A stretch of 64,000 nt of DNA. It comes from Piromyces finnis finn (taxonomy: Eukaryota; Fungi; Neocallimastigomycota). The translations under genes and the position numbers were made by a program. The notes under the pieces were generated by a model. That model did not search any database. It was not told the DNA's origin and was given only the letters and a program-made list of their open reading frames with translations. The stretch is from contig MCFH01000041.1 in assembly GCA_002104945.1 (NCBI GenBank), positions 1-64,000 on the forward strand, in the 5' to 3' direction. Below are positions 8,535-61,860 of this stretch, in pieces. Every line of letters starts with the position of its first letter. Position 1 is the stretch's first letter.

Positions 8535-10406
8535 ATGCCAAAAAGAGCTAATGATATTGAACAAACTTCTAATAAAAGAGGAAAGGTTACCGTTATAAAG
8601 AATGAAGAAATCAAACGTAGTTCCACTCCACCACCAATTTTTACCAATGTTAATGTTGTTAAAGATGAAAAAACTAGTCCGGTTCCAAATGAACCAGATT
8701 ATCTTAAACTTATTTTAACAGCTAATGTTTATTCTGGAAATGTTGTTAAAGAAACACCACTTTTCAAGGCTGTTAATTTATCTAATCGTGTTGGCAATAA
8801 TATTTTATTAAAACGTGAAGATCTTCAAGATGTATTCTCTTTCAAGATTAGAGGTGCTTACAACAAAATTTTACAATTATCTGAAGAAGAAAAGAAAAAG
8901 GGTGTTATTGCCTGTTCTGCCGGAAATCATGCTCAAGGTGTAGCCTTATCTTCTAACAAACTTGGTATTAAGGCTACTATTGTTATGCCAACAATGACTC
9001 CACCAATTAAAGTTAATAATGTTAAGCGTCTTGGTGGTAATGTTGTTTTACATGGTGTTGATTTTGCAGAAGCTAAGGCCAAGTGTGAAGAACTTACCAA
9101 GGTATAAATATTTAAAATATTTAATAATTTTTTTTTATTAAAAGGGAATAAAAAAAAATTATATAGAATTTATGATTAAATAATTATAAAATTTAATATA
9201 TATAGTAATATATAGTTTAATGATTTATTTTAATATTTTAAATATTTTCATAATTTATATATGAAATTAAATAATATTTAATGATAATAGGAAAAGGGAT
9301 ATGTTAATATTCCTCCATATGATGATCCATTAGTTATTGCTGGTCAAGGTACTATTGCTATGGAAATTCTTAGACAACATGACCCAAACACCATTCATAG
9401 TATATTCGTTCCAGTTGGTGGTGGTGGTCTTGTTGCTGGTATTGCTGCTTACGTTAAACGTATCTGTCCAAAGATAAAAGTTGTTGGTGTTGAAACCTAT
9501 GATGCAGATTGTATGTTCCGTTCTTTAAAAATGGGTAAGATTCAAAACTTACCAGAAGTTGGTTTATTTGCTGATGGTACAGCTGTACGTCAAGTTGGTA
9601 CTGAAACTTTCAGAGTTTGTCAAAAGTATGTTGATGAAATTATTTTAGTTAATACTGATGAAATTTGTGCAGCTGTTAAAGATGTATTTGAAGATACTAG
9701 AAGTATTCTTGAACCATCTGGTGCTTCCTCTGTTGCTGGTGCTAAGAAATATTTAGCTGAAAAGAAGCTTCATGGTGTTAATGCTATTGCTGTTACTAGT
9801 GGTGCTAATATGAACTTTGATCGTCTCCGTTTTGTTGCTGAACGTACTGGTTATGGTGAACAAAATGAAGCTTTAATTGCAGTTAATATTCCAGAAAAGC
9901 CAGGAAGTTTCCATAATCTTTATGACATTATTGAACCACGTGCTGTAACTGAATTTGCTTACCGTTACGGTGATGAAGAGATGGCCAAAATCTTTATGTC
10001 ATTCAATATTAAAAAGGGTACTACTCGTAAGCAAGATGTTAAAGATATTCTTACTCAATTAAAGAAACATGATATGAATGGTGTTGATCTTAGTAAGAAT
10101 GAGTTTGCTAAATTGCATGCTAGATATCTTATTGGTGGTAGAAAGAATGTTCCAAATGAACGTCTTTACCGTTTTATTTTCCCAGAAAGACCAGGAGCTT
10201 TAAAACACTTCCTTGACAGTTTAATGGGTAAATGGAATGTATCATTATTCCATTATCGTAACAGTGGTGGTGATGTTGCCAATGTTTTAGTTGGAATTCA
10301 AGTACCAAAAGAAGATAATGAAGAATTTGAAATATTCTTAAAAAACACCAAGTTCCCATATGTAAATGAAACAGAAAATGAAGCTTACAAGCTTTTCTTA
10401 CAATAA
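8535..10406 (+). CDS. ILV1: Biosynthetic threonine dehydratase (isoleucine pathway), 2 exons, 560 aa
   Basis: Exons 8535-9101 and 9291-10406. PLP motif [61 protein letters not shown], and two ACT-like regulatory repeats ([16 protein letters not shown]...LFHYRN). Confidence 0.97.
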
Positions 10407-14220: not shown

Positions 14221-15174
14221 TTAGTCTCTTTCAGTTTCAAAATCAATTAAACGCTTGCGAATTTCAGCTAGAATTTCATTTTGCTTCTTTGGACCTTCAG
14301 CAAGTTGTCTTATACAAAGAACATGTCTATTTAAAATATCAAACTTTTCATTAATAATATCAATGTCTTCTTCGTTTCCAGTTTTTAATTTCTTCTTATC
14401 TGGTTCTGTGGTACTCTTATATGGCTTCCAACCAACAACAACACCACCAGACTCTCTTAAAATACAAGTAGCTGCACAAACATCCCAAGCATGAATACCA
14501 ATTTCATAATAAGCATCACATGAACCACGAGCAACATAACACATATTTATAGCTGCTGAACCGAATGAACGAATACCATGAACCGGATATGAAATAACGT
14601 CATGTAATGTATCAAGTTTAGCTTTAATTGATTCTTCACTACGGTTAGCCCCATATTCAGTAATAATAAGTGATTTTTCTAGTGTTTCGAGTGGTTGTAT
14701 TGGACGAATCGTTGGTAATGGTTTTCCATTTAAGAAAGCACCACCATTCTTACTAGCAGTATATAAATCATTTAAGATTGGGTTGAATATAACACCAATA
14801 ACAGGTTCCTTTTTAATTAATAAACCAATTGAAATACAAATGAATGGTAAACCATGAACAAAATTAGTTGTACCATCAATTGGATCAATACACCAGGTTG
14901 GTTCATCAGTTAAGTTACAACTAGCATTATTGTTAGCAGCTGTAGTTTCTTCACCAATGAACGAGTGAGTTGGAAAAGTCTTATTTAAATGGCTTTTGAC
15001 CATCTTTTCGACATATTGGTCAGTAGCAGTAACAAGATCTGAAGAATTGTTTTGTTTTATATTTAAATTTTCGCTAATAAATTGTCTATTTTCAAAAGAT
15101 TCTTTAATTATCTTTCCCGCAATTTTAGCAATCTTTACAGCTTCATCTAAGTATTGTTGATATTCTGAAGACAT
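14221..15174 (-). CDS. Inositol monophosphatase, single exon, 317 aa
   Basis: DLVTATD, FIGEET, WCIDPIDGTTNFVHG, IRSFGSAA, YYEIGIHAWDVCAA are the eukaryotic IMPase signatures. Confidence 0.95.
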   Translation of the reverse strand: MSSEYQQYLDEAVKIAKIAGKIIKESFENRQFISENLNIKQNNSSDLVTATDQYVEKMVKSHLNKTFPTHSFIGEETTAANNNASCNLTDEPTWCIDPIDGTTNFVHGLPFICISIGLLIKKEPVIGVIFNPILNDLYTASKNGGAFLNGKPLPTIRPIQPLETLEKSLIITEYGANRSEESIKAKLDTLHDVISYPVHGIRSFGSAAINMCYVARGSCDAYYEIGIHAWDVCAATCILRESGGVVVGWKPYKSTTEPDKKKLKTGNEEDIDIINEKFDILNRHVLCIRQLAEGPKKQNEILAEIRKRLIDFETERD

Positions 15175-24041: not shown

Positions 24042-26919
<2,878 letters not shown>

Positions 26920-40257: not shown

Positions 40258-43182
40258 ATGAGTAAAGATATATACACATATTTTGATTTATTCCCCCATG
40301 AAAAGAATATGCAAAAATTTCCTGCTAGAATATCAAGTAAGGTACCTGTACAAATAGCAATGCACTCTAGAAATAATAGTAATGGTTATGAAGGCCATCA
40401 TTCTTATAAAAATGAAAAAATTTGTGATTATGATATGCCCTTAGTTAAACCAATTGCTATTAATACATTATCAAAAAAATCAAAAGATGAATCAAATTCT
40501 TATCAATCCTATTTCTCATTGGGACAAACCCCATCAAATTCATCAACTTCTTCAAACAATACTCAGAAAACTTTTAATAATAATAATAATAGTGTTATAG
40601 ATTATCAATTTAAATTTGATGAAGATGATTTTCCAAAAATTAGAAAGGAATCATTTGATAATAAAATGTCATTAAATTCAATAGAGTATAATGAAAGTGT
40701 AACATTTGCTGTATTAAATTCAGATATTTATGCTAAAAAGTCATATCGTGATTTTATTGATGGTAGTATTGAAGGCAATTATGACAGAGACTATAAAAAA
40801 TTATATAATGATAAGGATATAATGGATATTAAATCTATAAAAAATAAAGAAAATTTAAAGTCATTGTATACCCATGAAAGTCGTAATAACAACTCAAAAT
40901 TGAAGGAGGAAAAAGTACATAAAAAATTAATTGGAAATGAAATTATCTTTAATCCGGATGAATCACCTATTATTATTCCTGAAAAGCCTACTAATAATAA
41001 AGTTGATATGTCTAAAAGTATTCTTTTTAAAAACTCAAATTCATCTACTGATAGTTTGTCTTCTTCAGGTAGTCATTCTCATTCTGGAAAGAAGAGAGTT
41101 TCATTAAAAAAGACAAGAAATTCAATAAATATTTCAAGATCTAGAAGTAATAGTTTGAGTAAAAAGTCAGGTCATAAAAACGATTTTGATGATTATTCAG
41201 AATTCAATTTAGAAAGCTATTCTTCAGAGGTTCGCAGTTATTCACTTCCTAGAAGAAGTGTAGATTGTCATACAATAGATACTAGATCTCGTAGTAATAC
41301 TCTTCCAAGAAGTTTAATTATTAGTCCAGCAAAAGATGAAAAATTTCTTGTATACAGTTCCCCTAAAAAAGATTCTTATAATGTTCAAGATATCCCAGCT
41401 GTTAAAACAATGGAATATGAAAAAAAAAATAATTATAATTCATATGACGACGATAAAGGATCTTTCATATATAATCAATCCGATCTTATTTCACCATCCA
41501 TATGTGATGTTATAGAATACCGTAATTTTTTAAAATCAAAAAATTACGAAATGCCAGATTCTAAAGAAGAAAGAAGACATCGCTCCCTTTCTAGAAAACA
41601 TGAAAGTCGTTATAGATCGTTATCAAGAAGTAGTGATAATAATGATAAATCAGAAGGTAAAAGAAGGTCAAGGTCAAAATCAAAAAGAAAAAGCAAAAAC
41701 GAACATACAAACTTAACGGTAAAAAATGTAGATGATGAAAGTAGATATCGTTCTTTGTCAAGAAGTAGAAAAGATAGTCGGGATGATGAAAGAGTAGAAA
41801 AAATAGAAAAGGAAAGAGCAGAAAGAATGGAAAAAGAAAATAAAGAAAGAGAAAGAAAGCGTTCTACTTCTAGACATAAAAAATGTCACAGAAAAAATAA
41901 ATCTTCATCAAATCATGATAGCCCATTAGTGAAATCAAGTCCAATTGTGAGAAATAATAGCCACGGTAGTAATGTTGGAAGTCCTTTTAATAAAGGTAGT
42001 CCATTGGTTAGAAGAGATAGTCGTGGAAGTAATATTGGAAGCCCATTAACTAGAAAAGAAGGATATAGTAGCCCACTAGCTTCTAATAGTTTGGCAAATA
42101 ATAAATTTTCAACTGCATTTATTCAAAATGATTATAGTAAATCTCCTTTAGAAAGTAAATCACCATTTGAAAGTAGAAATTATCAAAATATTGAAAACGT
42201 ATTTCAAATCAATAAAAACGATTATCCAAATGTAAATATTAGTGATGAAGATGAAGATAATAAGAATAATTATTCTAGTACCACAACTGTTGGTAAAACA
42301 CAAAATAAGGATATCATTAATGAAATATGTGATCTTAAAAAGTTTTCTCAAGATTTCTCTTCTTTAAATGTTTTGGAAAGCATCCTTAATCGACCAATTG
42401 AAGATGATTTTGAATTTTTAAATTATAAAAGAATATCTGATGTACAAAAGTTGGATAATCATAAATTTTCTACTCTTACCAGATTGTCATCTCAATCCAA
42501 GCGTCGTAGTAAATCTCGTGAATTAGCAAGAAGAAATTCAGATATTGATTTTAGAAAAGGTCATAATAGAGCTAGTAGTGAGCAATTACGAAATGAAGAT
42601 GGTAGTAATGGTAAAGGTAATAAAAGAAATATTTTTAACTTTTTTTCTCATAAAAAGAGTAAAAGTTATTCCAGTTCATCTGATAAAAGTTTAAGTAATG
42701 AGAAGAATAAAGTATTAAATTTCGATAAAATGATTAAAGGAAATGAAACCATAAAAATAAAGTTACAATCTTCCAGTAAAATTGGATCACCATATATTAT
42801 TCCAAGATCAATGGATGATAATAGTAGTGATTCTGATATTAATAACGAGGAGTACAGTACAAGTTATAAAAACTTTTTAAAAGAAAAAATGATGAATCAA
42901 CAACAACAACAGCAACAATTTAATAAACCACCAATTAATAATATAAAAGATTATACTCCTCTTTTCCGAATAAATATGATTAATAATAATAGTATGAACC
43001 CGCATTTTAATAATATGGAATTCTATGGAGCCACAAAAGAAATGCCTACTAATCCATATGATCAATTTAATGATTTTAGTATGGATGAAATTGAAATTGA
43101 TAGAAAACCCGTTAATCATATTAAAAGAAATTCTTCATTAAGTAGAAACAATAAACATGGAAGTAAACGAATCATTTATTAA
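40258..43182 (+). CDS. Uncharacterised 974-aa Ser/Arg/Lys/Asn-rich, largely disordered protein, single exon
   Basis: A 2.9-kb open frame with higher GC than its flanks, which is implausible by chance at this AT content. Internal repeats are present and no catalytic motif was recognised. Confidence 0.85.
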   Translation: MSKDIYTYFDLFPHEKNMQKFPARISSKVPVQIAMHSRNNSNGYEGHHSYKNEKICDYDMPLVKPIAINTLSKKSKDESNSYQSYFSLGQTPSNSSTSSNNTQKTFNNNNNSVIDYQFKFDEDDFPKIRKESFDNKMSLNSIEYNESVTFAVLNSDIYAKKSYRDFIDGSIEGNYDRDYKKLYNDKDIMDIKSIKNKENLKSLYTHESRNNNSKLKEEKVHKKLIGNEIIFNPDESPIIIPEKPTNNKVDMSKSILFKNSNSSTDSLSSSGSHSHSGKKRVSLKKTRNSINISRSRSNSLSKKSGHKNDFDDYSEFNLESYSSEVRSYSLPRRSVDCHTIDTRSRSNTLPRSLIISPAKDEKFLVYSSPKKDSYNVQDIPAVKTMEYEKKNNYNSYDDDKGSFIYNQSDLISPSICDVIEYRNFLKSKNYEMPDSKEERRHRSLSRKHESRYRSLSRSSDNNDKSEGKRRSRSKSKRKSKNEHTNLTVKNVDDESRYRSLSRSRKDSRDDERVEKIEKERAERMEKENKERERKRSTSRHKKCHRKNKSSSNHDSPLVKSSPIVRNNSHGSNVGSPFNKGSPLVRRDSRGSNIGSPLTRKEGYSSPLASNSLANNKFSTAFIQNDYSKSPLESKSPFESRNYQNIENVFQINKNDYPNVNISDEDEDNKNNYSSTTTVGKTQNKDIINEICDLKKFSQDFSSLNVLESILNRPIEDDFEFLNYKRISDVQKLDNHKFSTLTRLSSQSKRRSKSRELARRNSDIDFRKGHNRASSEQLRNEDGSNGKGNKRNIFNFFSHKKSKSYSSSSDKSLSNEKNKVLNFDKMIKGNETIKIKLQSSSKIGSPYIIPRSMDDNSSDSDINNEEYSTSYKNFLKEKMMNQQQQQQQFNKPPINNIKDYTPLFRINMINNNSMNPHFNNMEFYGATKEMPTNPYDQFNDFSMDEIEIDRKPVNHIKRNSSLSRNNKHGSKRIIY

Positions 43183-47489: not shown

Positions 47490-50400
47490 ATGAATTCTAT
47501 TGAAAAAGTTGGTTATAATACTACTACTACTGCTACTACTATTACTACTACTACTAATAATAACAGTAATGATTTACAACAATTAAATTGTAATCAATAT
47601 GACTTAAATACTATCACAAATAAAAATATAGAAGAAGGGATAAATATTGGAAATAAGGATTATTTTTTAAAGGATGGAAATAATTTAAATTTAATAAGTG
47701 TTATACCAATAAATAAAAAAGAAAACGTTACAGAAGAAAATAGCATTAAGTGCAATATAGAAAAAATAGCAGAAAGTGAAGCAATTGATGAAAATGTTGT
47801 CATAGAAGATACACTATATAAATATGATTTAAAAATAGATAAAAATATACCGATAAAAACGGCGCAGAATTATTTTTATAAAACTTACTTTAATGAAAAA
47901 GATGATGAAAAACAAACAAAGGCTCCTTTTAAAATTATTAAAAAGAAAAATATTCCAATGCATATTCATATTAATCATTCTATTTTAAATAATATTTATA
48001 GAGACTCATCTTTAAAAAAAGATATATATGCTGATAATGGATTAGCTGATGCAGATGAAGAAGATCATATTTCAACTAATCATCTTCCATTAGAACTTTT
48101 TGATGATCCAGATTTTGAAATTTTTACTCCGAAAGAATGGTTACAATTAAGAAAAATATATTTAAAGAATTTTGATATTAATAAAGAACCAGAGATTCAA
48201 AAAAGCATTAAAAAGTTGAAAGATTTTAATTCTGTATTCCATCTTAAATTACAAAACTTAAATTACAGTAAAAGTGAAGAATATAATAACATTATAAATC
48301 GGATTTTAAATAATGAAAAAATTAAGGTTGATGAAGAATACTTAGGTTATGATGAAGAAGTTGTAAAATTTTTGATAGATTTAAAAAAAAAGGAAAAGGA
48401 ATACTTTGATAATAAAAGAAAAGAATACTTTAAAACAAAAGAGTTTGAAATTGAACTTGATAAAGATGATACAACACAAGAAATTAAAGAACTTAGAATT
48501 GTTGCTAAATATTTAATTGATGCTAAAGAGAATTGTACTATATGTGCTAATTCAAAAGATTGTATTGGGGTTAAAGCTTTTTCTAGATACTTTTATCATC
48601 ATAAATATAAACCAGAAGTTTTATGGGATTGGGAAAGATGCTGGGTTATTGATTATGATGAGGATACTAAATTGTATACAATTCATTGGGCTAAAACACA
48701 TATTAATAAGAAAGTTAAAAGATTAAATCTTTTCTTTGAAATAGAAAATAAAGAATATTTTTATAAAAGGGTAGATACTGCAAATTTAAATAGAGAAACT
48801 TTTGAAAAAGATAAAGAGTATTATAATATGATTGATACTCAAACTGATTCCAGCCAATTTGGTTCTTTACCTCAATTTCTGATTAATGGTATTATTAAGA
48901 GAGTTAACATTCCTATATGTGAAAGTCAAATTAATTATATGAAATATTTAATTAGTATTATTAATGAAGATTATATATTTAGTATGAAAAAAAATGATTA
49001 TGAATTTTATAATGGAAAATATGAATTAGAAAATAATCAAATTTCCAAAAAAAACCTAGTTTTTGCAAAACAGATAATGGATGCCGTAAATACACCCTTT
49101 GATGAAAATAATAAAGAATTTTTTTTCAGTATTGCTGAAAAAACAAAAGAACTTTCTCAGATATTTTTTGGTGCTAATGTTAAAATTCAAAGTATTATCA
49201 TAGATATTTTTGGAAAATTACATAATAAAATTATAAATCTTATGCATTTTAATAAAGAAACCAAATTTCCAATATCCTTTCTCTCTTACGAAAAAAAAGT
49301 TAAAGCTTTACTAAAAACAGAACAGATGCAATTAAGTACTAGTTGGCCTAATGCTATTGCAAGTTATATAGAAACAGATTTAAGTGATATATTTAATTTT
49401 AATATGATTGATGAAAAAGAATACTTAAATAGTCGTTGTAGAAGCTTTTTATCATTAATATCTTTAATTATGGAAGAAGAGCTAAAAAAGTTTATAATTC
49501 ATGGAATTCATCGACTCACAGAATTATTCGGAGGGTTTTTATTTTCAGATTTTAGCAATTCATATAGCCTTGATACAATTAATGAACAAACTATTAGAAA
49601 AACGTTTATAATTAATATTCATGTTTCTAATCATGATATTGATGAAAGAAAATTAAACAATGTTGATAAAAATAATAAAATTGTATTAGTTCCTTCATAT
49701 GAATATATTGAAGAATTTTTACATGATTTAATATATTCTCCTATTACTATTACAAAAAATGTCGTTCCTAATATCGAAACAATTATACTTTTAGGCATAT
49801 ACAATAATAATAATAGAAAGAAAAATAGATGGGTGAAAATAGATAAATTTAATGAAAATGAATACTTTAAAAAAAATGTTGCAATGCTGAATTATATACT
49901 TAGAAAAATTAAGGGACCTATGGAAGAGTTAGTAAAACATTATGAAAAATATGAATTTTTGATTCAAGAAGAATGTGAAAGCTTAATAAATAAAGACAAC
50001 ATTGATAATATTGATGAAATATGTAAAATAGTTGAAAAATTTTATAATGTTTCAAAAAGTATTAATTCAGCTGAATATGATACTTATGAAATTCTTCCGT
50101 TTATAATAAATGGGGAAAGTTTAAGAATTCTGTTGTATAATAGAACTAAAGCTATTTTGAACAATTTTAATAAGATATTATGTGAAAAATTAAAATCATG
50201 TTGTATAACGCTATCGAAGAATTATGAAAAAAGACATAGTCATTTACTTCTAAACCCAGGTCAAGATGTTGATCAATGGGTTATTCTTAGAGATACAATT
50301 AAAGAATGTACAAATGATTATCAATGGTATAATAAAGATTTAACTTATATTAAGAAACTTTGGGATATCCTATATTGTTATAATGTAAATATTAATACTG

Positions 50401-53400
50401 ATATTAGTGATCTTTATTGGATAACCATTGCCTGGCCAAAGAAAATTCTTGAAGAATTAGACGTTTCAACCAAAATATTAATGTCATCTAAAGAAGATAT
50501 TATTAATAGTATTAATAATAACCGTGAATATATCCAAAGTTCTATTACAGCATATTTAAATGAGATCCAAGAATATAATAAATTAGATAAATATTATGAA
50601 TATGATATGTTACAAAAAATGATTATTTTTAGAGAAAGAATTAATAACATTAAATCAAAAATTAAAAATGTAATTGATCAAGAGAAAAAGTTAGAGTTAG
50701 AAGTTACAGATTTTTCTAATTTCAATACATTATATTATTATTTTGACGGTCATGAAACATTATGGTCATTCTGTGATGAATATAATAAAACAATGGATAA
50801 ATGGAATGAAAGCTTTTTTTGTGTTATTAATGCAGATGAGGTAATATGTACAGTAAATAAATGGAATAAAACTATTTGTAAAGTTTGTTCTATTTTTGAA
50901 GGTTGCAATAATCCAATGATAGTAATTAAAAAGTATCAAGAGCAACTTAAAGATTATTATCAGTTTTTACCCATTATTATTTCATTGAGAAATCCATCAC
51001 TTCAACAAAAACATTGGGATAAAATTTCTCAAACAATAGGTCTTAGTCAAACTGATATTAATACCCTTCATTTAAAAGATATTTTCATGATGAATTTTGA
51101 ATTAGTTCAAGATATTTTAATTGAAATTAGTCAAAATGCTACTAATGAATTAAAATTACAAAAAAAGTTAGAAGCGTTTAAACAAAAATTAATGTCAAAG
51201 AGTTTTGTTGTAAATAAAAAATTTAAACCATATATTGTTATAGAAAATTTTCATTATATATCACAGGTATTTGAGGATTATCTTATTAAAGGTGAAAAAT
51301 TAGGTCAGTTATTAACAACAGATAGTGAACAATTAATTGAAAATTTGGCTCAATGGAATAAAAAAGTTTTACAATGTTTAAATTTTTTAAATCAATGGGA
51401 ACATCTTCAAACATATTATCTTAAAATTTATTCATTTTTCCAAAAATATAAAAGAAATATTTTTTATGAACAAAATGTTTTGAATGAATATGATCATATA
51501 TCTAAACTAATGTCATTGATTTCAGATATTCTAGATAAGAATATTAAGTGTATGATGATATTAGGAAGAACAGATATTTATGAAATGATAGTAAGCTCAA
51601 TTCCTCGTATTGAAAAAATTATAACCTTATTAGGTTCATATATTAATGATATAAGAGATAAATTTCCTCGTTTTTATTTTATTCCTGATAAAACACTTGT
51701 GAAAATAATTACTAATTCTTCAAGCATTGATTCAATAAATCATTATATAAATAAGTATTATAATAGTATATTGAAATTAGATGTTGAAGTTAAAGAATCT
51801 GAAAATGAAATAATAGTTAAAAATGATGATGTAAAAAGTGATGTAATAAATTATAGTGGGGTCTATAATAATTCATTATTAGAAGAAAAAAAATTTGGTA
51901 ATTTAAATAATTCTAAAGAAAATGATGATTTAGCTAATGAAAAAATATCAAATGTTGTTAATAATAAAGCATCAAATAATGAAGTACTGACTGGGGATGA
52001 AAACATTGGTAGTAGTAATGATATATTAAATATGACGTCATTTAATTTTGATTCATTTAATCAAAATGATAAAATTACTATATCACATGATGAATTAAAT
52101 ATTGATTATAAAAAACAGAATATGTTGAATTCCTCTTCTGATTATAGTGATAAAAGCAATACATTAATATCAAATAGTAAACTAAATATATTACCATTAA
52201 ATAATAATAATAATTTTAAATCTACAAGATCTCTAATAGTTAGTAATGAAAAAGTTAATAGTTCTACATTAGAAAGTATTAATAATGATATGTATAATCA
52301 ACATGAAAGTATAGATAGTATTGAACAAAGTATAAGTGAAGAAATACCTATTAATAGTTATGTTACAGGTATTTATAGTGTTAACAATGAATTTGTTAAG
52401 TTGAAAAATGATATAAAAATCGAAGGTCATTTATATGAGTGGTTAAAATCTCTTGATACGGAGATTATTCATTCGTTGAGAGAGTATTTATTTGAGGTAG
52501 TAAAAAATAAAGATTATGAAGAAGACATTGATAAATGGATATTCTATGCTCCATCTCAAATTATAATTTTAGCTATTCAAATAATTTATACAAAACTTAT
52601 AGATAATTCTTTAGAATCATCAAGTTGTAATTATATGAAACAAATAACACATGTTAGTTCTAAGTGCAATACTGATACTTTAAAACTTGTAAATTTATTA
52701 ATCAAAAATGAATGTAATATTTATCAACAATATATGATTGAAATAATATTAGGTTATTTAAATTATTACAGGGAAACTATTAACAATTTAAAAGGTGCTG
52801 ATAATAATGGAACATTATTAAAATATGAATGGCTAGAAAAAATAAGATATTACATTGAAGGAACAAATGTGTATGTTAAAGTATTTAATTATAAGGTATC
52901 TTATGAGTTTAATTATGTTGGCACATATCAAAGATTAATATTATCTAATCAGCAAATTGATTTTCGATCAACTTTAATTACTTCACTAAATTTTTCCAAT
53001 TTTAATACATATATTTCATCAACAGAATCTGGAAAAACAGAATCATTAATAAGTTTTACAAAATCATTAGGTCGTGAATTAATCATTTTAAATTGTACTA
53101 AATATACTAATCCTGTAAATATTGCAAGAATATTTAAAGGTTATTTATTGACAGGTTTTTGGATTTTATTCAAAGGTTTACAAAAATGCTCAAATGATTT
53201 TTTATCTGTTTTTCTTCAATATATAAAATCATTAAAGCAGGGAATCGATGCTAATATTAATTCTAATAAATCGACTATTGTATATTTTAATAAGGAATAT
53301 GAATTAAAGCCGTATAATTGTATTTTTACAAGTCTTTCTCTCCAAGAAAAAATGGAATGGTCACCAATACATTCATCACTTAAAAGACTTTTTAGAACTA

Positions 53401-56400
53401 ATAGTATACAAATTCCAGATATTACTAAAATATATGAAATAATTTTACAAGGATATGGATTCAAAGATTATATACTTTTAAGTAGGAAAATTGTACTTTT
53501 CATGAATCTTTATGCCAGTTATTTCTGTGATAATAGAAAATATACATGCAATCTGAAAACAATTAAAAAAGCATTATATAGCAAGTTGAAAAAACTAAAT
53601 AAAAACCGTGTTCATGATGAAAATTCAATTATTGCTCGTATATTAAACGATATATATTTACCTCAAATACAAATCAAAGAACTAGTTTTATACCGATCCT
53701 TACTTAAGGAGATATTTGGTTTTAATGAAAAGAATAATTCTGCAGAATTAACAGAAAGAATTGAAGAATCATGCAATGCTTTGAATTATAGTCCAATAAA
53801 AATATTGACACAGAAAATTGAACAACTATATAACTCAATTGATTCTGGTAAAGTTATAGTATTATTAGGACCAACTTTGTCTGGTAAAACAACATCATTA
53901 AAAATTTTAGAAGATATAATGAAAAGAAAATTTGAGATAAATAATGAGAAAATTAGAGCTCATAATATTGAAATTATAAAAAAATATAAACCTGAATTAG
54001 ATAAAAAAGATAGCAATGTTATAGATAGTAAAATAATTTCAAATATAAATAATAACAATAATAATAATGTTAATGAAAATATAGATAGTATTTATTATAT
54101 TGATAATAATTCAGATATATCTGATAACTCAGAGGATGAATTAATTTATGGATCAAATAATAATAAAGTTGAAGAGCCATTTTTAAAAGAAACAAAATTA
54201 AAAATTCATTATATTTATCCGAATGCTTGTAAGCCAGAAGAAATATATGGTTGTTATAATGCTGATACAAGAACATATTCTAATGGTATTATTGAATCAA
54301 TCATTGAAAGTGTTAATGAGAATGAAAATGATGTTTCGTATGCAATGAATAATTTAAATCCAATTGAAAAGACTTGGATTTGTTTAGATAATAATGGTTA
54401 TCCATACTGGTTAGATAGTTTATTTTCTCAAGTTGAAGATAAAAAGTTAGCGTATTCAGTAGAGATGAATGATATTAACATTTCAAGTTCAATCACATTT
54501 ATTTGTGAAACAAATGATATTAGTACCTTCACCCCTTCCTTCTTTTCGAAATCATTCATAATTAGCTATAGTGTAAGTCAAAAAATTTCAGATAGCATTG
54601 TCGTTCGTCGTGTTAACCAACTTGATGAAATATTTAAGAAGCAAATTGACTTATTCAAAATTCTGTATCATTTATTTATGAAACCATCTATTTCGTTTAT
54701 TACCAACAATTGTAATGCAGTTTTTGATATTCATCCATGTATATATATTGATAAAATATTTGGATTATTAGAATCATTGATTGATGAAATGACGGTAAAA
54801 TCTTTCTATAGACTAACAACAGAGGAACAAAAGTGTTGGATTATTATTACAACACTCTTCTGTGTTATTTGGGTTATTGGAAGTCTTGATGAAAATAATA
54901 TGAGAAAAAAATTTGATGAATTTGTTAAAAGTGAACTTTTGAAACAAGAGACCATTATGAAACTTCAAAAATTTAATTCTTTGTCAAGTTTCTGCTTAAA
55001 AAATATGATTATTTTCCCATATGAGGGAACTGTATATGATTATTATTTTGATAATAAATTATTAAGATGGAAAAAATGGGAAGCTAAGGAATTAGATACA
55101 TTTTTATTCCCAAGCATATATATTGGATGTGATAACATTATAAGAACAAAAGAAACATTACGTGTATTATATATAAATAGACTGTTATTAAAGAACAATA
55201 AAATACCTCTTATAATTGGTAAACACGGCGTTGGTAAATCAATAACAGCATGGACAAGTATAAATTATAAAAGAAAAGAAATTGCTGAGAACTCTGAGGC
55301 CTTTAGTATTCATTTGAATTCTAATTATACTATTGATATGTTTAAAAATTTTATAATTCAAAATCTATACAAAAAAAGACCAGATGCTTATGGTTTATCC
55401 AAAAATAAAAAAAACCTTGTATTAATAGATGATTTAAATAATATTGAATGTAATTATATCAAACATAGTAGTATCATTGAATTACTTCGCCAATGGTTTG
55501 AAATTGGTGGATGGTATATTAAAAATAAGTTTTGTAATATAGAAGATGTCATTCTTATTTTTACTGCTTCTACCTGTAATTCCTTTAAAAGTATTAATCA
55601 TAGGTTATTAAAAAAATTTCATTGTATTTCTATTGATGATGATATCGATTCATCCTTTAAAAGCATTATATCAAGTATATTGGATAATAATTTTAGAAAT
55701 GTCAAAAGTTTTAAATCTGCCTTTAATCTTTCTCTTACTGAAGCAATGAAAAATGTTTTCAATGAATCTAGATTAAAATTTCCTCAAACAGTTACAAATC
55801 CACATTATATTATTAGATTAAAAGACGCTGTAGATATTATCCATGGAGTAATTGAATATTCAAAAGAGGATATTGAGCAAATTAATATTCTAAAAATTTG
55901 GAATTATCATTGTAATAGAGTAATTAAATCAAAATTAAATACATTGGAAGATCAAGAAGAATTTTATAAAATAATGAAAACTGCAACAGAATCAACCTTT
56001 GATATTAAATATGAAGATATTTGTAATGAAAATGAGCCATATTATTATTTCCAATACTCAATATATAAAGAAAATGAAAAAGAACAAAAAACAGTTATTT
56101 TACAAGTTGATAATATTAATAAGTTCTTTAAAATATTTATGAATAAATTATTAATGGATAAATTAAATCCTTTCTCTTTTCGTAATAGTAAAGACTTATT
56201 TAAATGGCTTTATCCTAATGCTTTAAAATCAGCAATTATTTTAAGTAGATATTTAGAAATTTCAGGAAGTCATATTTTGTTAATTGGTAATAATGAATTT
56301 GATCATTCAAAAATTATTCGTTTAGCTGCTTCACTTAATAATAATAATTATATCAAATACGAAGGACCTGAATTGAATGAAGAAACATTTGATAATTGGA

Positions 56401-59400
56401 GAGAATTTATTAGAGATGTTATTATAAAGATATTAATTGGTGGTAAACCAATATTTTTGTTTATTCCTGAATATTATATAAAATACCAATACCAAGTTAA
56501 TGATATAGATAGTTTAATGACTGTAGGATTTATTTATGATTTATATGGTAACAATAATATTCCATTATTTGTTGTAACTAATTTAGTTAGTCAATTAAAT
56601 AAAGAAGGCTATGATGAATCAATTATTATTGATAATTTACCAGCAACATTAATATTACTTATCAAACGGAATTTACATATTGTTATTTCAACAAATATTA
56701 ATAATCCATTAAGAGAACTTGATTATTTCAGAAGTCATTCCTCTTTTCTTTCAAAATGTTCACCATTTTTAATTGGTTCTTTTGATAAAAGTACTCAATT
56801 ATATATATCTTCTAGTATTTTGGGAAATTTAAAGGATGAATTATCATCAAATATTGAAGATATTCAAACTGTTTCTATTGATATCTACAATTCCATTGCA
56901 AAAACATTATCTGTATATAATAAACAATATAAACAAAATATTAAATTGTCAAACAAATATTATATGTCTTTTGTCGAATACTTTTCCAAATTTTATAAAT
57001 TAAAAAATAGTGATATTGAAGGAAAACTTTCAATGTTTACTAAATTAATTGAAAAAATAGAACATATTTATGATTTAGGAAAAGATATTAAAAATGAATA
57101 TTATCAATGGGTTAAGAATTATGAACAACATACAATTAAAATCCAATTATTTTTGAAAGAAATTGAAAGTGAAAACGGAAGATTATCTAAAGTTTCTCAG
57201 CAAATTAAAAAGGAAGATAATACAGTAAGTTTAATCAAGAAACAAATTACGAAATTACAGGATGAATTAGAAAATGATTGTAAAAAGCCATTAGATTTAA
57301 TTGATGAAGCTATAGATCAAATAGAAAATTTAACTGATGATTGTATTAAAGATCTTAATTTTATTTCAAAACCTTCTGAAAATGAAAAAATTGTTATTCA
57401 AACTTTATGTATTGTTTTAAATATTGAACCTAATGAAAATGAAACTCTTTGGAACGCCGGAAAAAGAAATATTTGTGAAAAGGAGTTAATTGATAAAATT
57501 AAATATTTTGAAACTGATACAGTTACCCAGACTGTGATTCATTATATTGATATTATGATTTATTCCAAAAAATTCGACTTAGATGATTTATTAGAAAATT
57601 CAGTAGCTGTTGGTGCTTATGCATCATGGATTTTGGCAATAAGATCATATTGCCATCTGTTTCATATTATTCTTCCAAAAAAGAAAAAGATAACAATTTG
57701 GGAACAGAAATTAGAGATGAAAAATAAACAAATCAATGAGTTAAGGGAGTATGAAAATAAACAAAACAATCAACTAAAAGATGAAAAGAATAAATATGAT
57801 TTATTAATAAAAGAAAAAGAGAAGATATTAGAAAAATTAAAGAATAAAGAAGAAAATTATATGTCATCAAGAAAAATAATTAAAGCATTGACATTTATAG
57901 AACAAAACATAAGAAATAAAATACTAAAACTGAGAGAAAATAAAGAAATGTTAATTGGTGATTGTTTATGTGCATCATTTATTATTACTTATACAGGCAG
58001 ATTTCCAAGAAATATTAAAAATAAGATTATAAAGCCAATGCTAAATATATTATCATCTAATGAAATTTCCTTTTCTACTAAACATTTTTCTTTAACAAAA
58101 TTTACAAAAGGAAGTCGGTGGATAGATATACCAGCAAATACTGAAATACCAGAGAGTTTATCTTTCTTGGATAATTTATTACAAGTAAAATTGAATGATA
58201 ATTGGTGCATTATTTCTGATAAGCATTTAGTTTTTCATAAGTATTATTGTATGTTTGATGAAAAAGAAAAGGTTGATATTTGTTCAATTAAAGATATTGA
58301 ATTAAATAGAAAATTAATTTTTGCTTTAGAAAAAGGACATACTTTTATTTTATTACTTCATGAGAAAACTACAGGTGACCTTCCATTTTTTATAAGAAAA
58401 TTAATTAAGAGTAAGTATTTTCATAGTGAGAAATATAAGAATAAGCATAATTTTTCATTTTCTGGTATTACAGAAAATGTGATTATTTCTCCTGATTTTA
58501 GACTTCATTTATTAATTACAAAGCCAATAGAAATGGTAGATCCTAAATTTTTAAAATTCCTCGAGCCAATATATATTGATGTACCTGAAGAATTGATAAC
58601 AAATATATTAGTTAATAACTATTTCAATAAATTTGATCCTGGATTTAATAAAAATAGAAAAGAAAATACTAAAAATATTTCAAAAATATTTGATTTAATT
58701 AATAAAAACATTCAAGAGATGTATGAGATTATTAATACACTTGAGAAAAAAGACTTATATATTGGTCAAAATTATGAAAAATTAAATAAAAAGAATGAAG
58801 AATTTATTGAATTAAATCAAAAGTATGAAAATGAATTAAAAAATAAAGAAGAATTCAATATAAAATTGAAATGGATAACGAATTTATGTAAACATGGTTC
58901 ATGGCTTTTCCAACTTATGTCAAAATTCTCAAATATCGATTCAAGTTATCAATTCAATCTTAATAATTATTTAGAGTTAGTCGTAACTACATTTACAGAA
59001 TGTCCAGTAAATGATGAAGAAACACTTCAAGAAATTCGAAAGAGAATAACAAAAGCGTCATATGACATTATGTCTTTAGTATTGAAATATCATGATAGAA
59101 TAGTATTTGCATTTATTATATCACTAACAAATGTTTTTTATAATAAGGTTGAAGAGTATTCAATTTCTGAAAAGCTATGGAATTACTTCTTAAATAAAAA
59201 TGAAAATACCTTTTATCAAATAAATGAAAACGTAAAAAAAGAAAGATCTGATAAAGTAATTGTAAGACCAAATTCTATTTATAGTGACGGAACTGATCTA
59301 GATTTAATTGCTGCTAAATATGATGAAATTAAAAGAAATATTCCATGGATTACTGAAGAGAAATGGAATTTATTATTAAATTTATCTAAACTAGATCAGT

Positions 59401-61860
59401 TTTCTAAAGTACCATTTGATATTCTTAAGTCATTAAATGTAATGAATAATAACTCAAGAAATGATATGATTTCTTGGGATAGTATTTTAAATTATGATAT
59501 ATCTTCTATAAAATTACCACAAAGAATTGATAATTCATTAAAAGCTTTTGAAAAAATACTTCTTTCTTATTATATTCGACCACATTCTCTTAGTCAGTCT
59601 ATAGAAAGATATATTGAAGCTATATTAGGAGAAGAATATACGGATATAGATCAAAACATATTTGAAATAGCATATAATACATCAACACATCATAGACCAA
59701 TTATTATATATATAAATTTTGATGAGAACAATGCCGACTACTATATAAGATCATTCTCATATAAAAAAGGAATGACTAATAAAATTAAATACATCGTATT
59801 TAATAATAATTTAGATGAAGTTAATAATACTTTAGATGAAGGTATGGCAATGGGATATTGGGTAATATTCACTAATTGTGAAAACTATACTGAATGGTTT
59901 AAAGAATTTGAAGAAAAGTTTACCATGTTTAAATGTAATAATAATTGTAGAATTAATCCATATTTTAGATTATGGATAATATTTAATAATAATAGTGAAA
60001 AGCAATTACCTTATAATTATGTGCAAAATTGTGTTAAAATTATTAACAATAACACTGATGATTTTAGATTTCAGTTTAATGAAGCGGTATCTTTAATTGA
60101 TAATATATTTTCACCTGCTAATATTGCATCTTTGAACACCTATCAAATAATTCTCTATAAATTATGCCTTTTCTACACAATTATAACCCTTTCAATAGAC
60201 AGTGGCTCTATTATCTTAAATAATAATTTATTATTTAAAATGAAAGATTTAAGGGTTGCTGGTCAACAACTAAATGAAATATTTTCTTCATTTATAAAAA
60301 ATTCTGGAAGTATAAAAACTGTCCAAAATTTTGTAAAAGGAATGATATTTTATAAGAATTTCCAAATACAAACTTCATATATTGAGGATGTAGAAATATT
60401 AAGTAGTTATTTTGATGATATAATGAATATTCCATGGAAAACACAAAATTCCAATTCAAAGCAATCTTTCTTTACTGTTAAAATTAATCCAATTATTAGT
60501 AATATAATGAATCAAGATCTTCAAAATGCATTTGAATCTTTACAAAATCATGACATTGATAAGGTTCATAAAATTATTCTATCTATGAATAAAAAGAAGA
60601 ACTTATCTTCATGTTTTGGCATTGGAAATTATTTAAAGAAAGAAAAAAACAAAAATAATAGTATGAATATTATGAAAACTATTAAAAAACTTTATATTGA
60701 AGATATTAACGAACCATGTGAATTCTTATGGACATCATATGATAAAATCAAAAGTATTTTAACTTATTATTTGGATTTATTAAATAAAAAATTAATGAAT
60801 ACTATATTTAACTCCGAAAAATATAGTTTAGAGGATTTAGAAAAAAATTTAAAAATTACAAGATATTTAGATCATGTATTACTTGATAATGTAAAGCATT
60901 ACTTTAATTTATTACAAATTGTTAAAGAATACTTTAATAGATGGCTAGATAGTGATTATATCTTTAATCCTAAATATAATGATTTTGCAAATAATATAAT
61001 TAATAATATCTTACCATATGAATTTAAAATTGAAAATATTGGATATCCAACTCAACTTAATTTAAATTCGTGGATTGATGATTTTATTAGTAGAATGTCT
61101 TTTATTCAATCTTGGTATGAAAGAGAAGCTTATCAGAACCCTTTGATTGCTTATGATTTATCAAAAATATATAATCCTGGATTATTTATTATAGGTAGAT
61201 ACAATAATAATTTCAAAGAAAAAAAACTTTTTATTTATTTATTTATATTATTTATTTATTTAGCAATATTACAGGATTACGCTAGACAGACACATTCATC
61301 ATATGAAAATGTAAAGTTTGATATTATGCTGATTAATGTTGATCAAATAAAACCACCAGATCGTGGAATATATATTAAAGGTTTAAAATTAGTTGGTGCA
61401 AATTGGGATTATTCAAGAGGTATTTTAACAGATAATCTACCACATGAATCCGTAAACTTAATTCCTTGTGTAAAAATCTATATAATATATTCTATCCATT
61501 AAAATATTATATATATTATGTTATTAATTATAAAATTTTTTATTGCTCTAATATTTACTTTTATTTTAATAGATTTGGTTACAACCTCATATTAAATTTA
61601 ATAATCATGATTTTGTAGAAATCGAACCATCAAATACTACATCACAATTCCAAAGATATCGATGTCCAGTATATTTATTTATAACTAAAAATGGATATAC
61701 TAATGAATTTAATTACAGTAGTTTATATATTACTACTTTAGAGCTTTCTATTGACAATTCAACAACATATTGGTCAGAAAAAAATGTTTGCATGATATGC
61801 GAATATGCTGAAGATGAAGAAGAATTTAATATATTAAAACTTGCTGATAAAAATAACTAA
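47490..61860 (+). CDS. Highly divergent axonemal inner-arm dynein heavy chain, DNAH1-type N-terminus, 3 exons, 4732 aa
   Basis: Exons 47490-61194, 61264-61469, 61573-61860 total 14199 nt. DNAH1-type tail motifs LPLELFDDPDFEIFTPKEW and VIDYDEDTKLYTIH; LRNPSLQQKHWDKI; FPRFYFI; P-loops GPTLSGKT (AAA2) and GKHGVGKS (AAA3); stalk/MTBD; C-terminus GIYIKGLKLVGANWD and YRCPVY. Confidence 0.9.

What the first reader, a model, noticed from the sequence alone, without database searches (positions are those of the whole stretch)
52900..54560. Candidate pseudo-motor: full-length DNAH1-type dynein with all AAA1 catalytic elements substituted
Seen versus the canonical axonemal consensus: Walker A GPAGTGKT is SSTESGKT (53016-53039); Walker B CFDEFNR is LFKGLQK (53169-53177, both acids lost); sensor I ITMNPG is FTSLSL (about 53325); sensor II MRAVK is LKTIK (53556); the AAA2 arginine finger SRCG is SKSF (54549). 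Known: hydrolysis at AAA1 drives the power stroke, and mutating the Walker B Glu alone abolishes motility. Yet 4,732 codons stay open in a genome where stops arise easily, and tail, linker, ring, stalk and C-terminal domains are all kept. Inference: a selected, catalytically dead dynein acting as a structural tether, brake or spacer in the zoospore flagellum.
Basis: partly seen in the sequence, partly recalled or inferred. Interest (0 to 1): 0.85.

Follow-up and report, generated by a model that had tools for sequence, protein, structure and literature searches.

The report
Dead-engine dynein of zoosporic fungi
This Piromyces finnis gene encodes a complete, expressed, evolutionarily conserved dynein heavy chain whose main ATP-burning site is broken, and it belongs to a whole class of such "dead-engine" dyneins in flagellated fungi, similar in kind to the non-motile dyneins recently described in animals.

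Summary
The gene (Piromyces finnis BCR36DRAFT_414609, + strand, 47490-61860, three exons, 4732 aa) is a full dynein heavy chain. In AAA1 the Walker B acids, the sensor I Asn, the sensor II Arg and the AAA2 arginine finger are all replaced. Only the G-K-T core of Walker A survives.

It is not a decaying gene:
- The frame has 0 stops in 4670 codons.
- dN/dS is 0.07-0.20 against three gut-fungal orthologues, and 0.19-0.22 in AAA1.
- Transcript contigs from three runs show both introns spliced out.

It is not a DNAH1 orthologue. It sits (100/100 support, tail E 1e-118) in a divergent dynein class found in Chytridiomycota and Neocallimastigomycota. All 16 sampled members lack the AAA1 Walker B D-E and the AAA4 P-loop. 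They keep the AAA2 and AAA3 P-loops, a 298-aa stalk/MTBD and a single-headed inner-arm-type tail.

Kollmar (2016) catalogued such fungal classes (probably class-17) without examining the ATP sites. Non-motile dyneins (DNAHX, DNHD1) are known in animals. Canonical IAD3 dyneins with intact motifs coexist in gut fungi.

Best reading: a selected non-motile axonemal dynein that still binds microtubules. That role is inferred, not shown.

The parts
47490..61860 (+). Whole gene BCR36DRAFT_414609 (4732 aa). Exons are 47490-61193, 61263-61469 and 61573-61860.
   Evidence: 100% match to P0001. Exon mapping. Both introns are absent from transcript contigs of runs X1, X2 and X3.
61194..61262 (+). Intron 1: 69 nt, in frame with no stop, so the raw ORF reads through it.
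   Evidence: Contigs in X1 and X3 jump from 61194 to 61265.
61470..61572 (+). Intron 2: 103 nt, GT..AG.
   Evidence: A joint 61469->61573 is seen in all three runs.
47490..50744 (+). N-terminal tail (residues 1-1085). From about residue 380 onward it is homologous to single-headed inner-arm dynein tails and strongly homologous to the tails of the chytrid divergent class.
   Evidence: Tail profile vs PDB: Leishmania IDAa heavy chain E 2.5e-12, T. brucei 9e5c_6a 2e-11, Chlamydomonas 8glv_JG 4.8e-10. Against chytrid class members E is 1e-118 to 1e-36. dN/dS 0.18-0.19.
50745..51803 (+). Linker (Pfam DHC_N2, residues 1086-1438).
   Evidence: Pfam E 1.1e-43.
51846..52364 (+). 173-aa low-complexity insertion in the linker (residues 1453-1625). 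An insertion at this position occurs across the class (40-190 aa).
   Evidence: Full-length alignment against five canonical DHCs.
52902..53891 (+). AAA1 module (residues 1805-2134). The fold is kept but the catalytic residues are lost.
   Evidence: Pfam AAA_6 matches 1-327 of 327, E 2.1e-47. AF2 model pLDDT 78; best PDB matches are dynein AAA1 modules, E 1e-17. dN/dS 0.19-0.22.
53016..53039 (+). AAA1 Walker A: SSTESGKT (canonical GPAGTGKT). The G-K-T core is kept.
53166..53186 (+). AAA1 Walker B: LFKGLQK (canonical CFDEFNR). Both acids are lost, and these positions vary among orthologues (KG, EN, NN, KD).
53325..53345 (+). AAA1 sensor I region: FTSLSLQ (canonical FITMNPG). Asn is replaced by Ser in all four orthologues.
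53550..53567 (+). AAA1 sensor II: NLKTIK (canonical GMRAVK). Arg is replaced by Lys in all four orthologues.
53868..53891 (+). AAA2 P-loop GPTLSGKT, intact. G..xSGK[ST] is kept across the class.
53955..54185 (+). Asn-rich insertion in AAA2 (residues 2156-2232), specific to the gut-fungal members.
54540..54557 (+). AAA2 arginine-finger region: FFSKSF (canonical TVSRCG). Arg is replaced by Lys, Tyr, Lys and Lys in the four orthologues.
55218..55241 (+). AAA3 P-loop GKHGVGKS, intact.
55416..55442 (+). AAA3 Walker B LVLIDDLNN. The D-D matches canonical axonemal dyneins. The downstream GPPGGGRN motif is not kept.
56286..56312 (+). AAA4 P-loop position: GNNEFDHSK (canonical GVGGSGRQS). It is invariant in the four orthologues, and the class shares a G..[GF]D[HR] replacement.
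57084..57977 (+). Stalk coiled coil plus microtubule-binding domain (residues 3199-3496, 298 aa). The length is conserved across the class, there is no IAD3/4 flap, and the hallmark Pro/Trp residues are kept.
   Evidence: AF2 pLDDT 89.6. Best PDB match is the human inner-arm dynein d stalk-MTBD 8i3j, TM 0.74/0.79. dN/dS 0.13-0.17, and the highest identity of any domain.
59703..60044 (+). AAA6 region (Pfam Dynein_heavy D6, residues 4072-4185). The C-terminal domain (Dynein_C) follows to the end of the gene.

Best explanation
The gene encodes the gut-fungal member of a divergent dynein heavy chain class restricted to zoosporic fungi (Chytridiomycota plus Neocallimastigomycota). This is most likely the class Kollmar 2016 called class-17.

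The class arose from a single-headed inner-arm dynein of the IAD3/IAD4 group. It kept the inner-arm-type tail, linker, six-module ring, stalk and microtubule-binding domain. It lost the residues that hydrolyse ATP at AAA1 (Walker B Asp-Glu, sensor I Asn, and in most members the AAA2 arginine finger and sensor II Arg) and the AAA4 P-loop. AAA2 and AAA3 keep their P-loops and probably still hold nucleotide.

Without AAA1 hydrolysis there can be no canonical power stroke. The protein therefore most likely works as a non-motile dynein. Its tail would anchor it in the zoospore axoneme, and its intact stalk/MTBD would contact the neighbouring doublet as a passive or nucleotide-modulated cross-bridge (brake, spacer or regulator). 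Less likely, it acts as an assembly or transport partner of active dyneins.

Shown here: gene structure, expression, purifying selection, class membership, the state of the motifs, and retention of the AAA1 and stalk/MTBD folds.

Inferred: loss of motility, axonemal location, microtubule binding, and the tether or brake role.
For: Gene and architecture
- Full DHC architecture by Pfam.
- Motif states read against solved and canonical dyneins.

Selection and expression
- 0 stops in 4670 codons, against 244-855 in the other frames.
- Intact orthologous ORFs on four metagenome contigs, with the same 3' exon layout.
- NG86 dN/dS is 0.07-0.20 for the whole gene and 0.12-0.31 in every domain. AAA1 is 0.19-0.22 and the stalk 0.13-0.17.
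- Spliced transcript contigs identical to the window in three runs.

Class membership
- An exhaustive profile search drops from 2181 bits (own clade) to 340 bits. The next hits are chytrid DHCs from Spizellomyces, Quaeritorhiza, Borealophlyctis, Geranomyces, Nowakowskiella and Batrachochytrium.
- The clade of gut-fungal plus chytrid divergent DHCs has 100/100 support under LG+C20 PMSF, and groups with IAD3+IAD4 at 82/100.
- Tails are homologous at E 1e-118 to 1e-36, evidence independent of the motor domain.

Class-wide features
- All 16 class members lack the AAA1 Walker B D-E. The AAA4 P-loop is replaced in every member examined there, and AAA2 and AAA3 P-loops are kept.
- The stalk/MTBD is 298 aa in the class, the hallmark residues are kept, and the confident model matches the DNAH1 stalk-MTBD crystal structure.

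Contrast with canonical dyneins
- Canonical IAD3 orthologues in Neocallimastix californiae, N. lanati and Piromyces sp. E2 keep all five AAA1 motifs. They are 93% identical between genera, against 66-74% for this gene.

Established knowledge
- AAA1 hydrolysis drives dynein motility.
- The DNAHX preprint (10.1101/2025.01.18.633724) shows a dynein with degenerate AAA1 motifs, including sensor II Arg->Lys, that is non-motile.
Against: - No biochemical, localisation or proteomic data exist for any member of the class.
- G-K-T in AAA1 and an intact AAA3 Walker A and Walker B leave room for some nucleotide-driven cycle.
- Strong constraint on the linker, the whole ring and the exact stalk length is more than a simple spacer would seem to need. 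It hints at retained allostery.
- dS is saturated for most pairs. The RNA runs are coded and the life stage is unknown, so zoospore-specific expression is not shown.
- Identity with Kollmar's class-17 rests on elimination: no WD40 tail, so not class-10.
- The canonical paralogue was seen in three other gut-fungal genomes but not directly in P. finnis.
Confidence: 0.6

Rival explanations
1. It is still a working motor. ATP turnover has moved to AAA3, the only site with both Walker A and Walker B intact, or AAA1 hydrolyses with non-canonical residues. The conserved linker and stalk would then still perform a power stroke or an ATP-gated microtubule release.
For: - The AAA3 P-loop and D-D Walker B are conserved across the class.
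- AAA1 G-K-T is invariant, and two orthologues have a near-canonical P-loop.
- The linker, ring and an indel-free 298-aa stalk are under purifying selection.
Against: - The AAA1 Walker B positions are not merely changed. They vary freely among close orthologues (KG, EN, NN, KD), which is not the behaviour of a catalytic site.
- Sensor I, sensor II and the arginine finger are also lost.
- The conserved AAA3 GPPGGGRN motif is lost, and the AAA4 P-loop is gone.
- In studied dyneins AAA3 regulates motility but does not drive it (established knowledge).
- A 40-190 aa insertion sits in the linker.
Confidence: 0.1
2. It is a non-motile dynein that does not act as a cross-bridge in the mature axoneme. 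Instead it serves as a chaperone or 'phi-particle template' that pairs with active single-headed dyneins, keeping them inhibited during intraflagellar transport and assembly. This is the role proposed for DNAHX.
For: - The DNAHX preprint proposes this role for a dynein with a degenerate AAA1.
- The tail is of the single-headed inner-arm type and could share light chains with active inner-arm dyneins.
Against: - Unlike DNAHX, the stalk/MTBD carries no disrupting insertion and is the best conserved domain. That argues that microtubule contact matters.
- The class descends from inner-arm dyneins, not from OAD-alpha.
Confidence: 0.15
3. It is the fungal orthologue of animal DNHD1 (Kollmar class-11), an ancient orphan dynein that also lacks Walker B, rather than a fungus-specific invention.
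For: - DNHD1 also lacks the AAA1 Walker B residues and has disordered insertions.
- A 2026 atlas of fungal flagellar proteins lists a 'DNHD1' orthogroup with 14 fungal proteins.
- From my own memory, unchecked: the sizes are similar, about 4750 aa.
Against: - Kollmar 2016 separates class-11 (HD1, metazoan only) from the fungal classes 10 and 17, each with 100% support.
- No DNHD1-named protein appeared among the 150 best profile hits or the named clusters.
- The tail is closest to single-headed inner-arm tails.
Confidence: 0.07
4. It is a decaying or recently dead gene (pseudogene), or an annotation artefact.
For: - The catalytic motifs are lost.
- The protein is only about 25% identical to canonical dyneins in AAA1.
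- It contains long low-complexity insertions.
Against: - 0 stops in 4670 codons in a 23% G+C gene.
- Four intact orthologues with dN/dS of 0.07-0.20.
- Correct splicing in three RNA data sets.
- Relatives across the chytrid fungi.
Confidence: 0.01

Closest known systems
Kollmar's fungal dynein class-17 (DHC17), specific to Chytridiomycota and Neocallimastigomycota (Mol Biol Evol 2016, PMC5100056)
   Same: - The taxonomic range matches.
- The motor domain is divergent and falls outside the nine canonical classes.
- The tail can be aligned to a canonical axonemal class.
- The domain order is standard, with no WD40 tail. That excludes the other fungal class, class-10.
   Different: Identity with class-17 could not be checked sequence by sequence, because his lists are not held. 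That paper states that the ATP hydrolysis sites were not analysed, so the class-wide loss of AAA1 catalytic residues and of the AAA4 P-loop is not described there.
[quoted passage not shown]
   Same: - A full-length dynein with poorly conserved AAA1 motifs that vary within the subfamily.
- Sensor II Arg->Lys.
- Extra insertions.
- The same concept of a selected non-motile dynein.
   Different: - DNAHX descends from outer-arm alpha, keeps Walker B, and has insertions that disrupt the stalk/MTBD and lock AAA4.
- The fungal class descends from single-headed inner-arm dyneins, loses Walker B and the AAA4 P-loop, and keeps an uninterrupted 298-aa stalk/MTBD.
- The fungal class is an independent origin in fungi.
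DNHD1 (dynein heavy chain domain 1; Kollmar class-11)
   Same: An orphan dynein lacking the AAA1 Walker B residues, with disordered insertions, and required for flagellar axoneme integrity in mammals (as reported in the DNAHX preprint and in the MMAF papers listed).
   Different: Kollmar reports it as metazoan-specific. Orthology to the fungal class was not testable here.
Canonical single-headed inner-arm dyneins: IAD3 (DNAH3/7/12) and IAD4 (DNAH1, Chlamydomonas dynein d)
   Same: - These give the best sequence matches in the PDB (DNAH7, DNAH3, DHC2, DNAH12, DNAH1).
- The tail is of the same type.
- The stalk-MTBD model is closest to the DNAH1 crystal structure.
- They group together at 82/100.
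   Different: - Identity is only about 25% in AAA1, where canonical fungal and animal members share 60-80%.
- The AAA1 catalytic motifs and AAA4 P-loop are lost.
- There is no MTBD flap.
- There is a linker insertion.
- It lies outside both clades.
Insect DNAH7-like / DNAH12-like paralogues with degenerate AAA1 (for example Chrysoperla, Phlebotomus, Ischnura, Polistes)
   Same: Also full dyneins with substituted AAA1 Walker A, Walker B, sensor I and sensor II.
   Different: They nest inside animal IAD3, so they are a separate and younger origin.

Membership tests
Dynein heavy chain superfamily | Linker, six AAA+ modules, stalk with MTBD between AAA4 and AAA5, and a C-terminal domain, in canonical order. 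| tested here: met
   Pfam finds DHC_N2, AAA_6, AAA_lid, AAA_7, MT, Dynein_heavy and Dynein_C in order. The AAA1 and stalk-MTBD models match solved dyneins.
DNAH1 / IAD4 (Kollmar class-8) orthologue | Falls inside the IAD4 clade in a motor-domain tree. | tested here: not met
   The IAD4 clade is supported at 99/98 without it. The fungal class forms an unresolved trichotomy with IAD3 and IAD4.
DNAH1 / IAD4 (Kollmar class-8) orthologue | Canonical AAA1 catalytic motifs (GPAGTGKT, DE, N, R, R-finger). | tested here: not met
DNAH1 / IAD4 and IAD3 | An inserted flap of about 10-15 residues in the MTBD, shared by the sampled IAD3 and IAD4 members. | tested here: not met
   The stalk/MTBD segment is 298 aa, against 304-310 in the sampled IAD3 and IAD4 members. 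The gap lies at the flap position.
Fungal divergent dynein class (Chytridiomycota + Neocallimastigomycota) | Monophyly of motor domains with the chytrid divergent DHCs. | tested here: met
   100/100 under LG+C20+F+G4 PMSF. The same clade has 100 SH-like support in FastTree on 151 rows.
Fungal divergent dynein class (Chytridiomycota + Neocallimastigomycota) | Tail homology within the class, independent of the motor domain. | tested here: met
   The gut-fungal tail profile hits Spizellomyces at E 1e-118, Quaeritorhiza at 4e-95 and Batrachochytrium at 7e-79. Canonical DHCs reach 1e-21 at best.
Fungal divergent dynein class (Chytridiomycota + Neocallimastigomycota) | Shared derived states: AAA1 Walker B acids lost, AAA4 P-loop replaced by G..[GF]D[HR], and an insertion in the linker. 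| tested here: met
Kollmar class-17 by name | Being among the sequences he assigned to class-17. | not testable with these tools
   No supplementary files are held. The assignment is inferred from the taxonomic range and from exclusion of class-10.
Kollmar class-10 | A C-terminal tail of about 1500 aa with seven WD40 repeats, and a long unique region in place of AAA5. | tested here: not met
   No WD40 is found in P0001, P0026, P0028, P0179 or P0041, and all end in Dynein_C.
DNAHX subfamily | Descent from outer-arm alpha heavy chain. | tested here: not met
   It groups with the single-headed IAD3 and IAD4, away from the OAD and IAD1 rows.
DNAHX subfamily | Insertions in the stalk/MTBD that abolish microtubule binding. 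| tested here: not met
   There is no insertion. The length is conserved, the hallmark residues are kept, and the model has pLDDT 89.6.
Non-motile (pseudo-ATPase) dyneins as a functional kind | AAA1 unable to hydrolyse ATP, with the gene under purifying selection. | tested here: inconclusive
   By sequence the catalytic residues are absent and selection is strong. ATPase activity and motility cannot be measured here.
DNHD1 (class-11) | Orthology to animal DNHD1. | not tested
Kollmar reports class-11 as metazoan only.

The most novel reading that the evidence does not exclude
Zoosporic fungi carry an ancient dynein class that has been rewired rather than merely disabled. AAA1 is a dead site, possibly permanently nucleotide-bound. 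The intact AAA3 site and the exactly conserved stalk would then form an ATP-gated microtubule clamp. That would be a switchable inter-doublet brake built from an inner-arm dynein, and a dynein mechanism not centred on AAA1.
Probability: 0.12. Interest if true: 0.85.

Novelty: new member of a known kind. Interest (0 to 1): 0.55.

Why it matters
Dynein research has only recently recognised that some heavy chains are selected non-motors (DNAHX, DNHD1), and what they do is still open.

This fungal class is an independent, old and well-conserved example, and it differs in one useful way. It keeps an apparently functional stalk and microtubule-binding domain while AAA1 and AAA4 are dead. That makes it a natural experiment on what a dynein ring does without its engine.

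It also occurs in chytrids that can be grown, and from my own knowledge Spizellomyces punctatus can be transformed. Its location and function are therefore directly testable.

For gut fungi it adds a lineage-specific component to the zoospore flagellum.

Tried and rejected
Calls that failed or returned nothing useful
- the first MAFFT run timed out. It was repeated with faster settings.
- The look-up of sequencing runs was busy. The repeat succeeded.
- Kollmar's supplementary lists are not held, so class-17 membership could not be verified by name.
- a Pfam call exceeded the size limit. It was split into.
- the ESM Atlas search returned only generic dynein fragment clusters and gave no lead to DNHD1.
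- a search with a 1071-aa piece, meant to catch fragmentary gene models in other named gut-fungal genomes, found nothing at E 1e-40. The candidate list was probably swamped by Asn-rich words, so this blank is uninformative.
- earlier notes of this scan hold nothing on dynein heavy chains of this genome.

Readings rejected
- FastTree joined all degenerate dyneins (fungal and insect) into one group. I rejected this as long-branch attraction, because the site-heterogeneous careful tree puts the insect group inside animal IAD3 and leaves the fungal class separate.
- the quick tree placed the fungal class next to the long IFT-dynein outgroup. The finished careful search did not.
- Pseudogene reading: rejected.

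Not established
- P. finnis's own canonical inner-arm dyneins were not seen by name. The canonical orthologues of Neocallimastix and Piromyces sp. E2 are 93% identical, so the P. finnis copy may be hidden inside a 90% cluster.

Full report
**What is there**

The window is very AT-rich. It holds one giant ORF on the + strand, 47490-61502, of 4670 codons. Its translation is 100% identical to Piromyces finnis BCR36DRAFT_414609, a 4732-aa protein.

Comparing that protein with the ORF shows three exons:
- exon 1: 47490-61193
- exon 2: 61263-61469
- exon 3: 61573-61860

The introns are 69 nt (in frame, so the ORF reads through it) and 103 nt.

Pfam finds the complete dynein heavy chain order: DHC_N2 linker, AAA_6 (AAA1, 1-327 of 327, E 2e-47), AAA lid, AAA_7, the MT stalk, D6 and Dynein_C.

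**The observation**

phmmer against all PDB chains aligns the AAA1-AAA3 region to human DNAH7, DNAH3, DNAH12 and DNAH1 and to Chlamydomonas DHC2, with E 1e-59 to 1e-54.

| Element | Canonical | Here |
|---|---|---|
| Walker A | GPAGTGKT | SSTESGKT |
| Walker B | CFDEFNR | LFKGLQK |
| Sensor I | FITMNPG | FTSLSLQ |
| Sensor II | GMRAVK | NLKTIK |
| AAA2 arginine finger | SRCG | SKSF |

The Walker A G-K-T core is retained. The AAA2 P-loop (GPTLSGKT), the AAA3 P-loop (GKHGVGKS) and the AAA3 Walker B (DD, as in canonical axonemal dyneins) are intact. The AAA4 P-loop is replaced by GNNEFDHSK.

**Is it a live gene?**

With the gene's base composition about 10% of random codons are stops. The coding frame has none in 4670 codons (P about 1e-216), while the other five frames have 244-855.

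Three orthologues, 66-74% identical to one another and to P. finnis, were found in metagenomes (P0002, P0003, P0004). Their DNA was fetched. All are intact ORFs followed by the same small Dynein_C exon.

Nei-Gojobori dN/dS is 0.07-0.20 over the whole gene. For the least saturated pair dS is 0.78 and omega is 0.19. Every domain is constrained (0.12-0.31), including AAA1 (0.19-0.22). The stalk/MTBD is the most conserved domain.

Runs listed as RNA (the kind is a guess by the tool) hold the locus. Contigs from three of them match the window without mismatches and skip both introns: GT..AG 61469->61573 in all three runs, and 61194->61265 in two. The gene is therefore transcribed, spliced and under purifying selection. 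The pseudogene reading is excluded.

**What class is it?**

Outside its own clade the best word-based hits are only about 25% identical in AAA1. An exhaustive profile search with AAA1-AAA3 of the four orthologues falls from 2181 bits to 340 bits.

The next proteins are chytrid dyneins of 3900-4600 aa, from:
- Spizellomyces
- Quaeritorhiza
- Borealophlyctis
- Geranomyces
- Nowakowskiella
- Batrachochytrium dendrobatidis (BDEG_22814 / BDV3_004356)

These have ordinary dynein architecture without WD40 repeats.

Their AAA1 is degenerate too. None of the 16 clade members keeps the Walker B D-E, and sensor I is lost in all. The arginine finger and sensor II are lost in most, and Walker A ranges from near-canonical to destroyed. 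AAA2 and AAA3 P-loops are kept. The AAA4 P-loop is replaced across the class by a related G..[GF]D[HR] motif. A linker insertion of 40-190 aa sits at the same place.

FastTree lumped all degenerate dyneins together. A careful IQ-TREE search with LG+C20+F+G4 (PMSF) gives a different picture:
- It separates an insect DNAH7-like degenerate group, which nests in animal IAD3.
- It recovers the gut-fungal plus chytrid clade at 100/100.
- It places that clade in an unresolved trichotomy with IAD3 and IAD4 (82/100 for the three together).

Independent of the motor, the gut-fungal tail profile hits the chytrid tails at E 1e-118 to 1e-36, and canonical dyneins at 1e-21 at best. Against the PDB it hits Leishmania 'IDAa heavy chain', a T. 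brucei inner-arm chain and Chlamydomonas 8glv_JG at 1e-12 to 1e-10, but dynein d only at E 1.2.

So the ancestry is single-headed inner-arm dynein, but the protein is not a DNAH1 orthologue.

**Paralogy**

Batrachochytrium, Quaeritorhiza, Borealophlyctis and Nowakowskiella each have both a canonical IAD3-type dynein and a divergent-class member.

Gut fungi have canonical IAD3 orthologues: Neocallimastix californiae, N. lanati and Piromyces sp. E2, each 70% identical to the chytrid protein. All five AAA1 motifs are intact in them. They are 93% identical between genera. AT bias therefore does not explain the motif loss, and the divergent class evolves several times faster.

P. finnis's own canonical copy was not seen by name, probably because it is merged into a 90% cluster. 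A 2026 atlas of fungal flagellar proteins lists all canonical heavy-chain orthogroups in the minimal flagellum of flagellated fungi.

**Stalk and microtubule-binding domain**

The stalk-MTBD segment is exactly 298 aa in the four orthologues and 288-298 aa (mostly 297-298) in the class members. It is 304-310 aa in the sampled IAD3 and IAD4 members, which carry a flap. The five nearly universal residues (two Pro, two Trp, one Ala) are kept.

An AlphaFold2 model from a 29-sequence alignment has mean pLDDT 89.6 and the expected layout: CC1, a bundle of short helices, then CC2. Its best solved match is the crystal structure of the human inner-arm dynein d stalk and MTBD (8i3j, TM 0.74/0.79).

The AAA1 model (pLDDT 78) matches dynein AAA1 modules at E 1e-17.

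**Literature**

Kollmar 2016 (PMC5100056) defined 17 dynein classes. [quoted passage not shown] Class-10 has a WD40 tail. The new classes have tails alignable to canonical axonemal classes. The paper states that the ATP hydrolysis sites were not analysed.

Chai et al. 2025 (bioRxiv 10.1101/2025.01.18.633724) describe DNAHX, a non-motile outer-arm-derived subfamily with degenerate AAA1, and note that DNHD1 lacks Walker B.

A text search for non-motile, inactive or degenerate dyneins found no fungal case.

**Interpretation**

The evidence supports a selected, expressed dynein whose AAA1 cannot carry out canonical hydrolysis. It belongs to an old fungal class in which this loss is universal.

The AAA1 Walker B positions vary freely among close orthologues, while the G-K-T, the Ser at sensor I and the Lys at sensor II are fixed. 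The pocket is therefore no longer catalytic, but it may still bind nucleotide in some members. In P. finnis a Glu inside the P-loop makes even that uncertain.

The conserved inner-arm-type tail and the restriction to zoosporic fungi argue for an axonemal location. The conserved MTBD argues for microtubule contact. Taken together, these point to a non-motile cross-bridge, brake or regulator (confidence about 0.6 for the whole chain of inference).

Rivals are a DNAHX-like assembly or transport partner (0.15), a rewired AAA3-dependent machine (0.1), DNHD1 orthology (0.07) and decay (0.01).

**Verdict**

The gene class was catalogued before, and non-motile dyneins are a known kind, so this is a new member of a known kind rather than something categorically new. 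The class-wide catalytic loss in fungi, combined with an intact microtubule-binding stalk, appears unreported in the literature searched, and it is experimentally accessible.

Noticed in passing
Proteins P0016, P0044, P0052, P0055, P0057, P0156, P0165, P0169 (not in the window): Insects (Chrysoperla, Phlebotomus, Ischnura, Brassicogethes, Gonioctena, Phymastichus, Polistes) carry DNAH7-like or DNAH12-like heavy chains with degenerate AAA1 Walker A, Walker B, sensor I and sensor II. In the tree the sampled ones (P0044, P0052, P0055, P0156) form a clade inside animal IAD3. This is a second, independent candidate lineage of non-motile inner-arm dyneins.
   Followed up: partly
window 61194-61262: The first intron is 69 nt, in frame and free of stops. 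The raw ORF reads straight through it and adds 23 spurious residues. Transcript contigs show it removed.
   Followed up: yes
window 57566: One transcript contig of run X2 carries an extra A after 57566 inside the coding region, which would shift the frame. X1 and X3 do not show it. It is probably an assembly or homopolymer error, or a strain difference.
   Followed up: no
P0036, P0179-P0188 (Batrachochytrium dendrobatidis): The B. dendrobatidis member of the divergent class is annotated very unevenly across assemblies. Pieces range from 164 to 4540 aa, and some are named 'dynein light chain binding'. Inventories of chytrid dyneins that rely on single assemblies may miss or split it.
   Followed up: no
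P0041 (JGI metagenome contig of 107 kb): An unnamed 4519-aa dynein is the nearest relative of the gut-fungal clade in both trees. Both branches are long. It has a canonical-looking AAA1 P-loop (GPAGVGKT) but no Walker B acids. Its organism is unknown.
   Followed up: no
window 9360-10406 (+), 14221-15174 (-), 24042-25985 (-), 40258-43182 (+): The neighbouring ORFs are unrelated to cilia: a threonine dehydratase piece, an inositol monophosphatase, a C2H2 zinc-finger protein, and a 974-aa ORF with no Pfam match.
   Followed up: partly
PMC13358043, supplementary table: A 2026 atlas of fungal flagellar proteins lists a 'DNHD1' orthogroup with 14 fungal proteins, not restricted to flagellated fungi. 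These might include members of the class described here. The accession lists were not examined.
   Followed up: no
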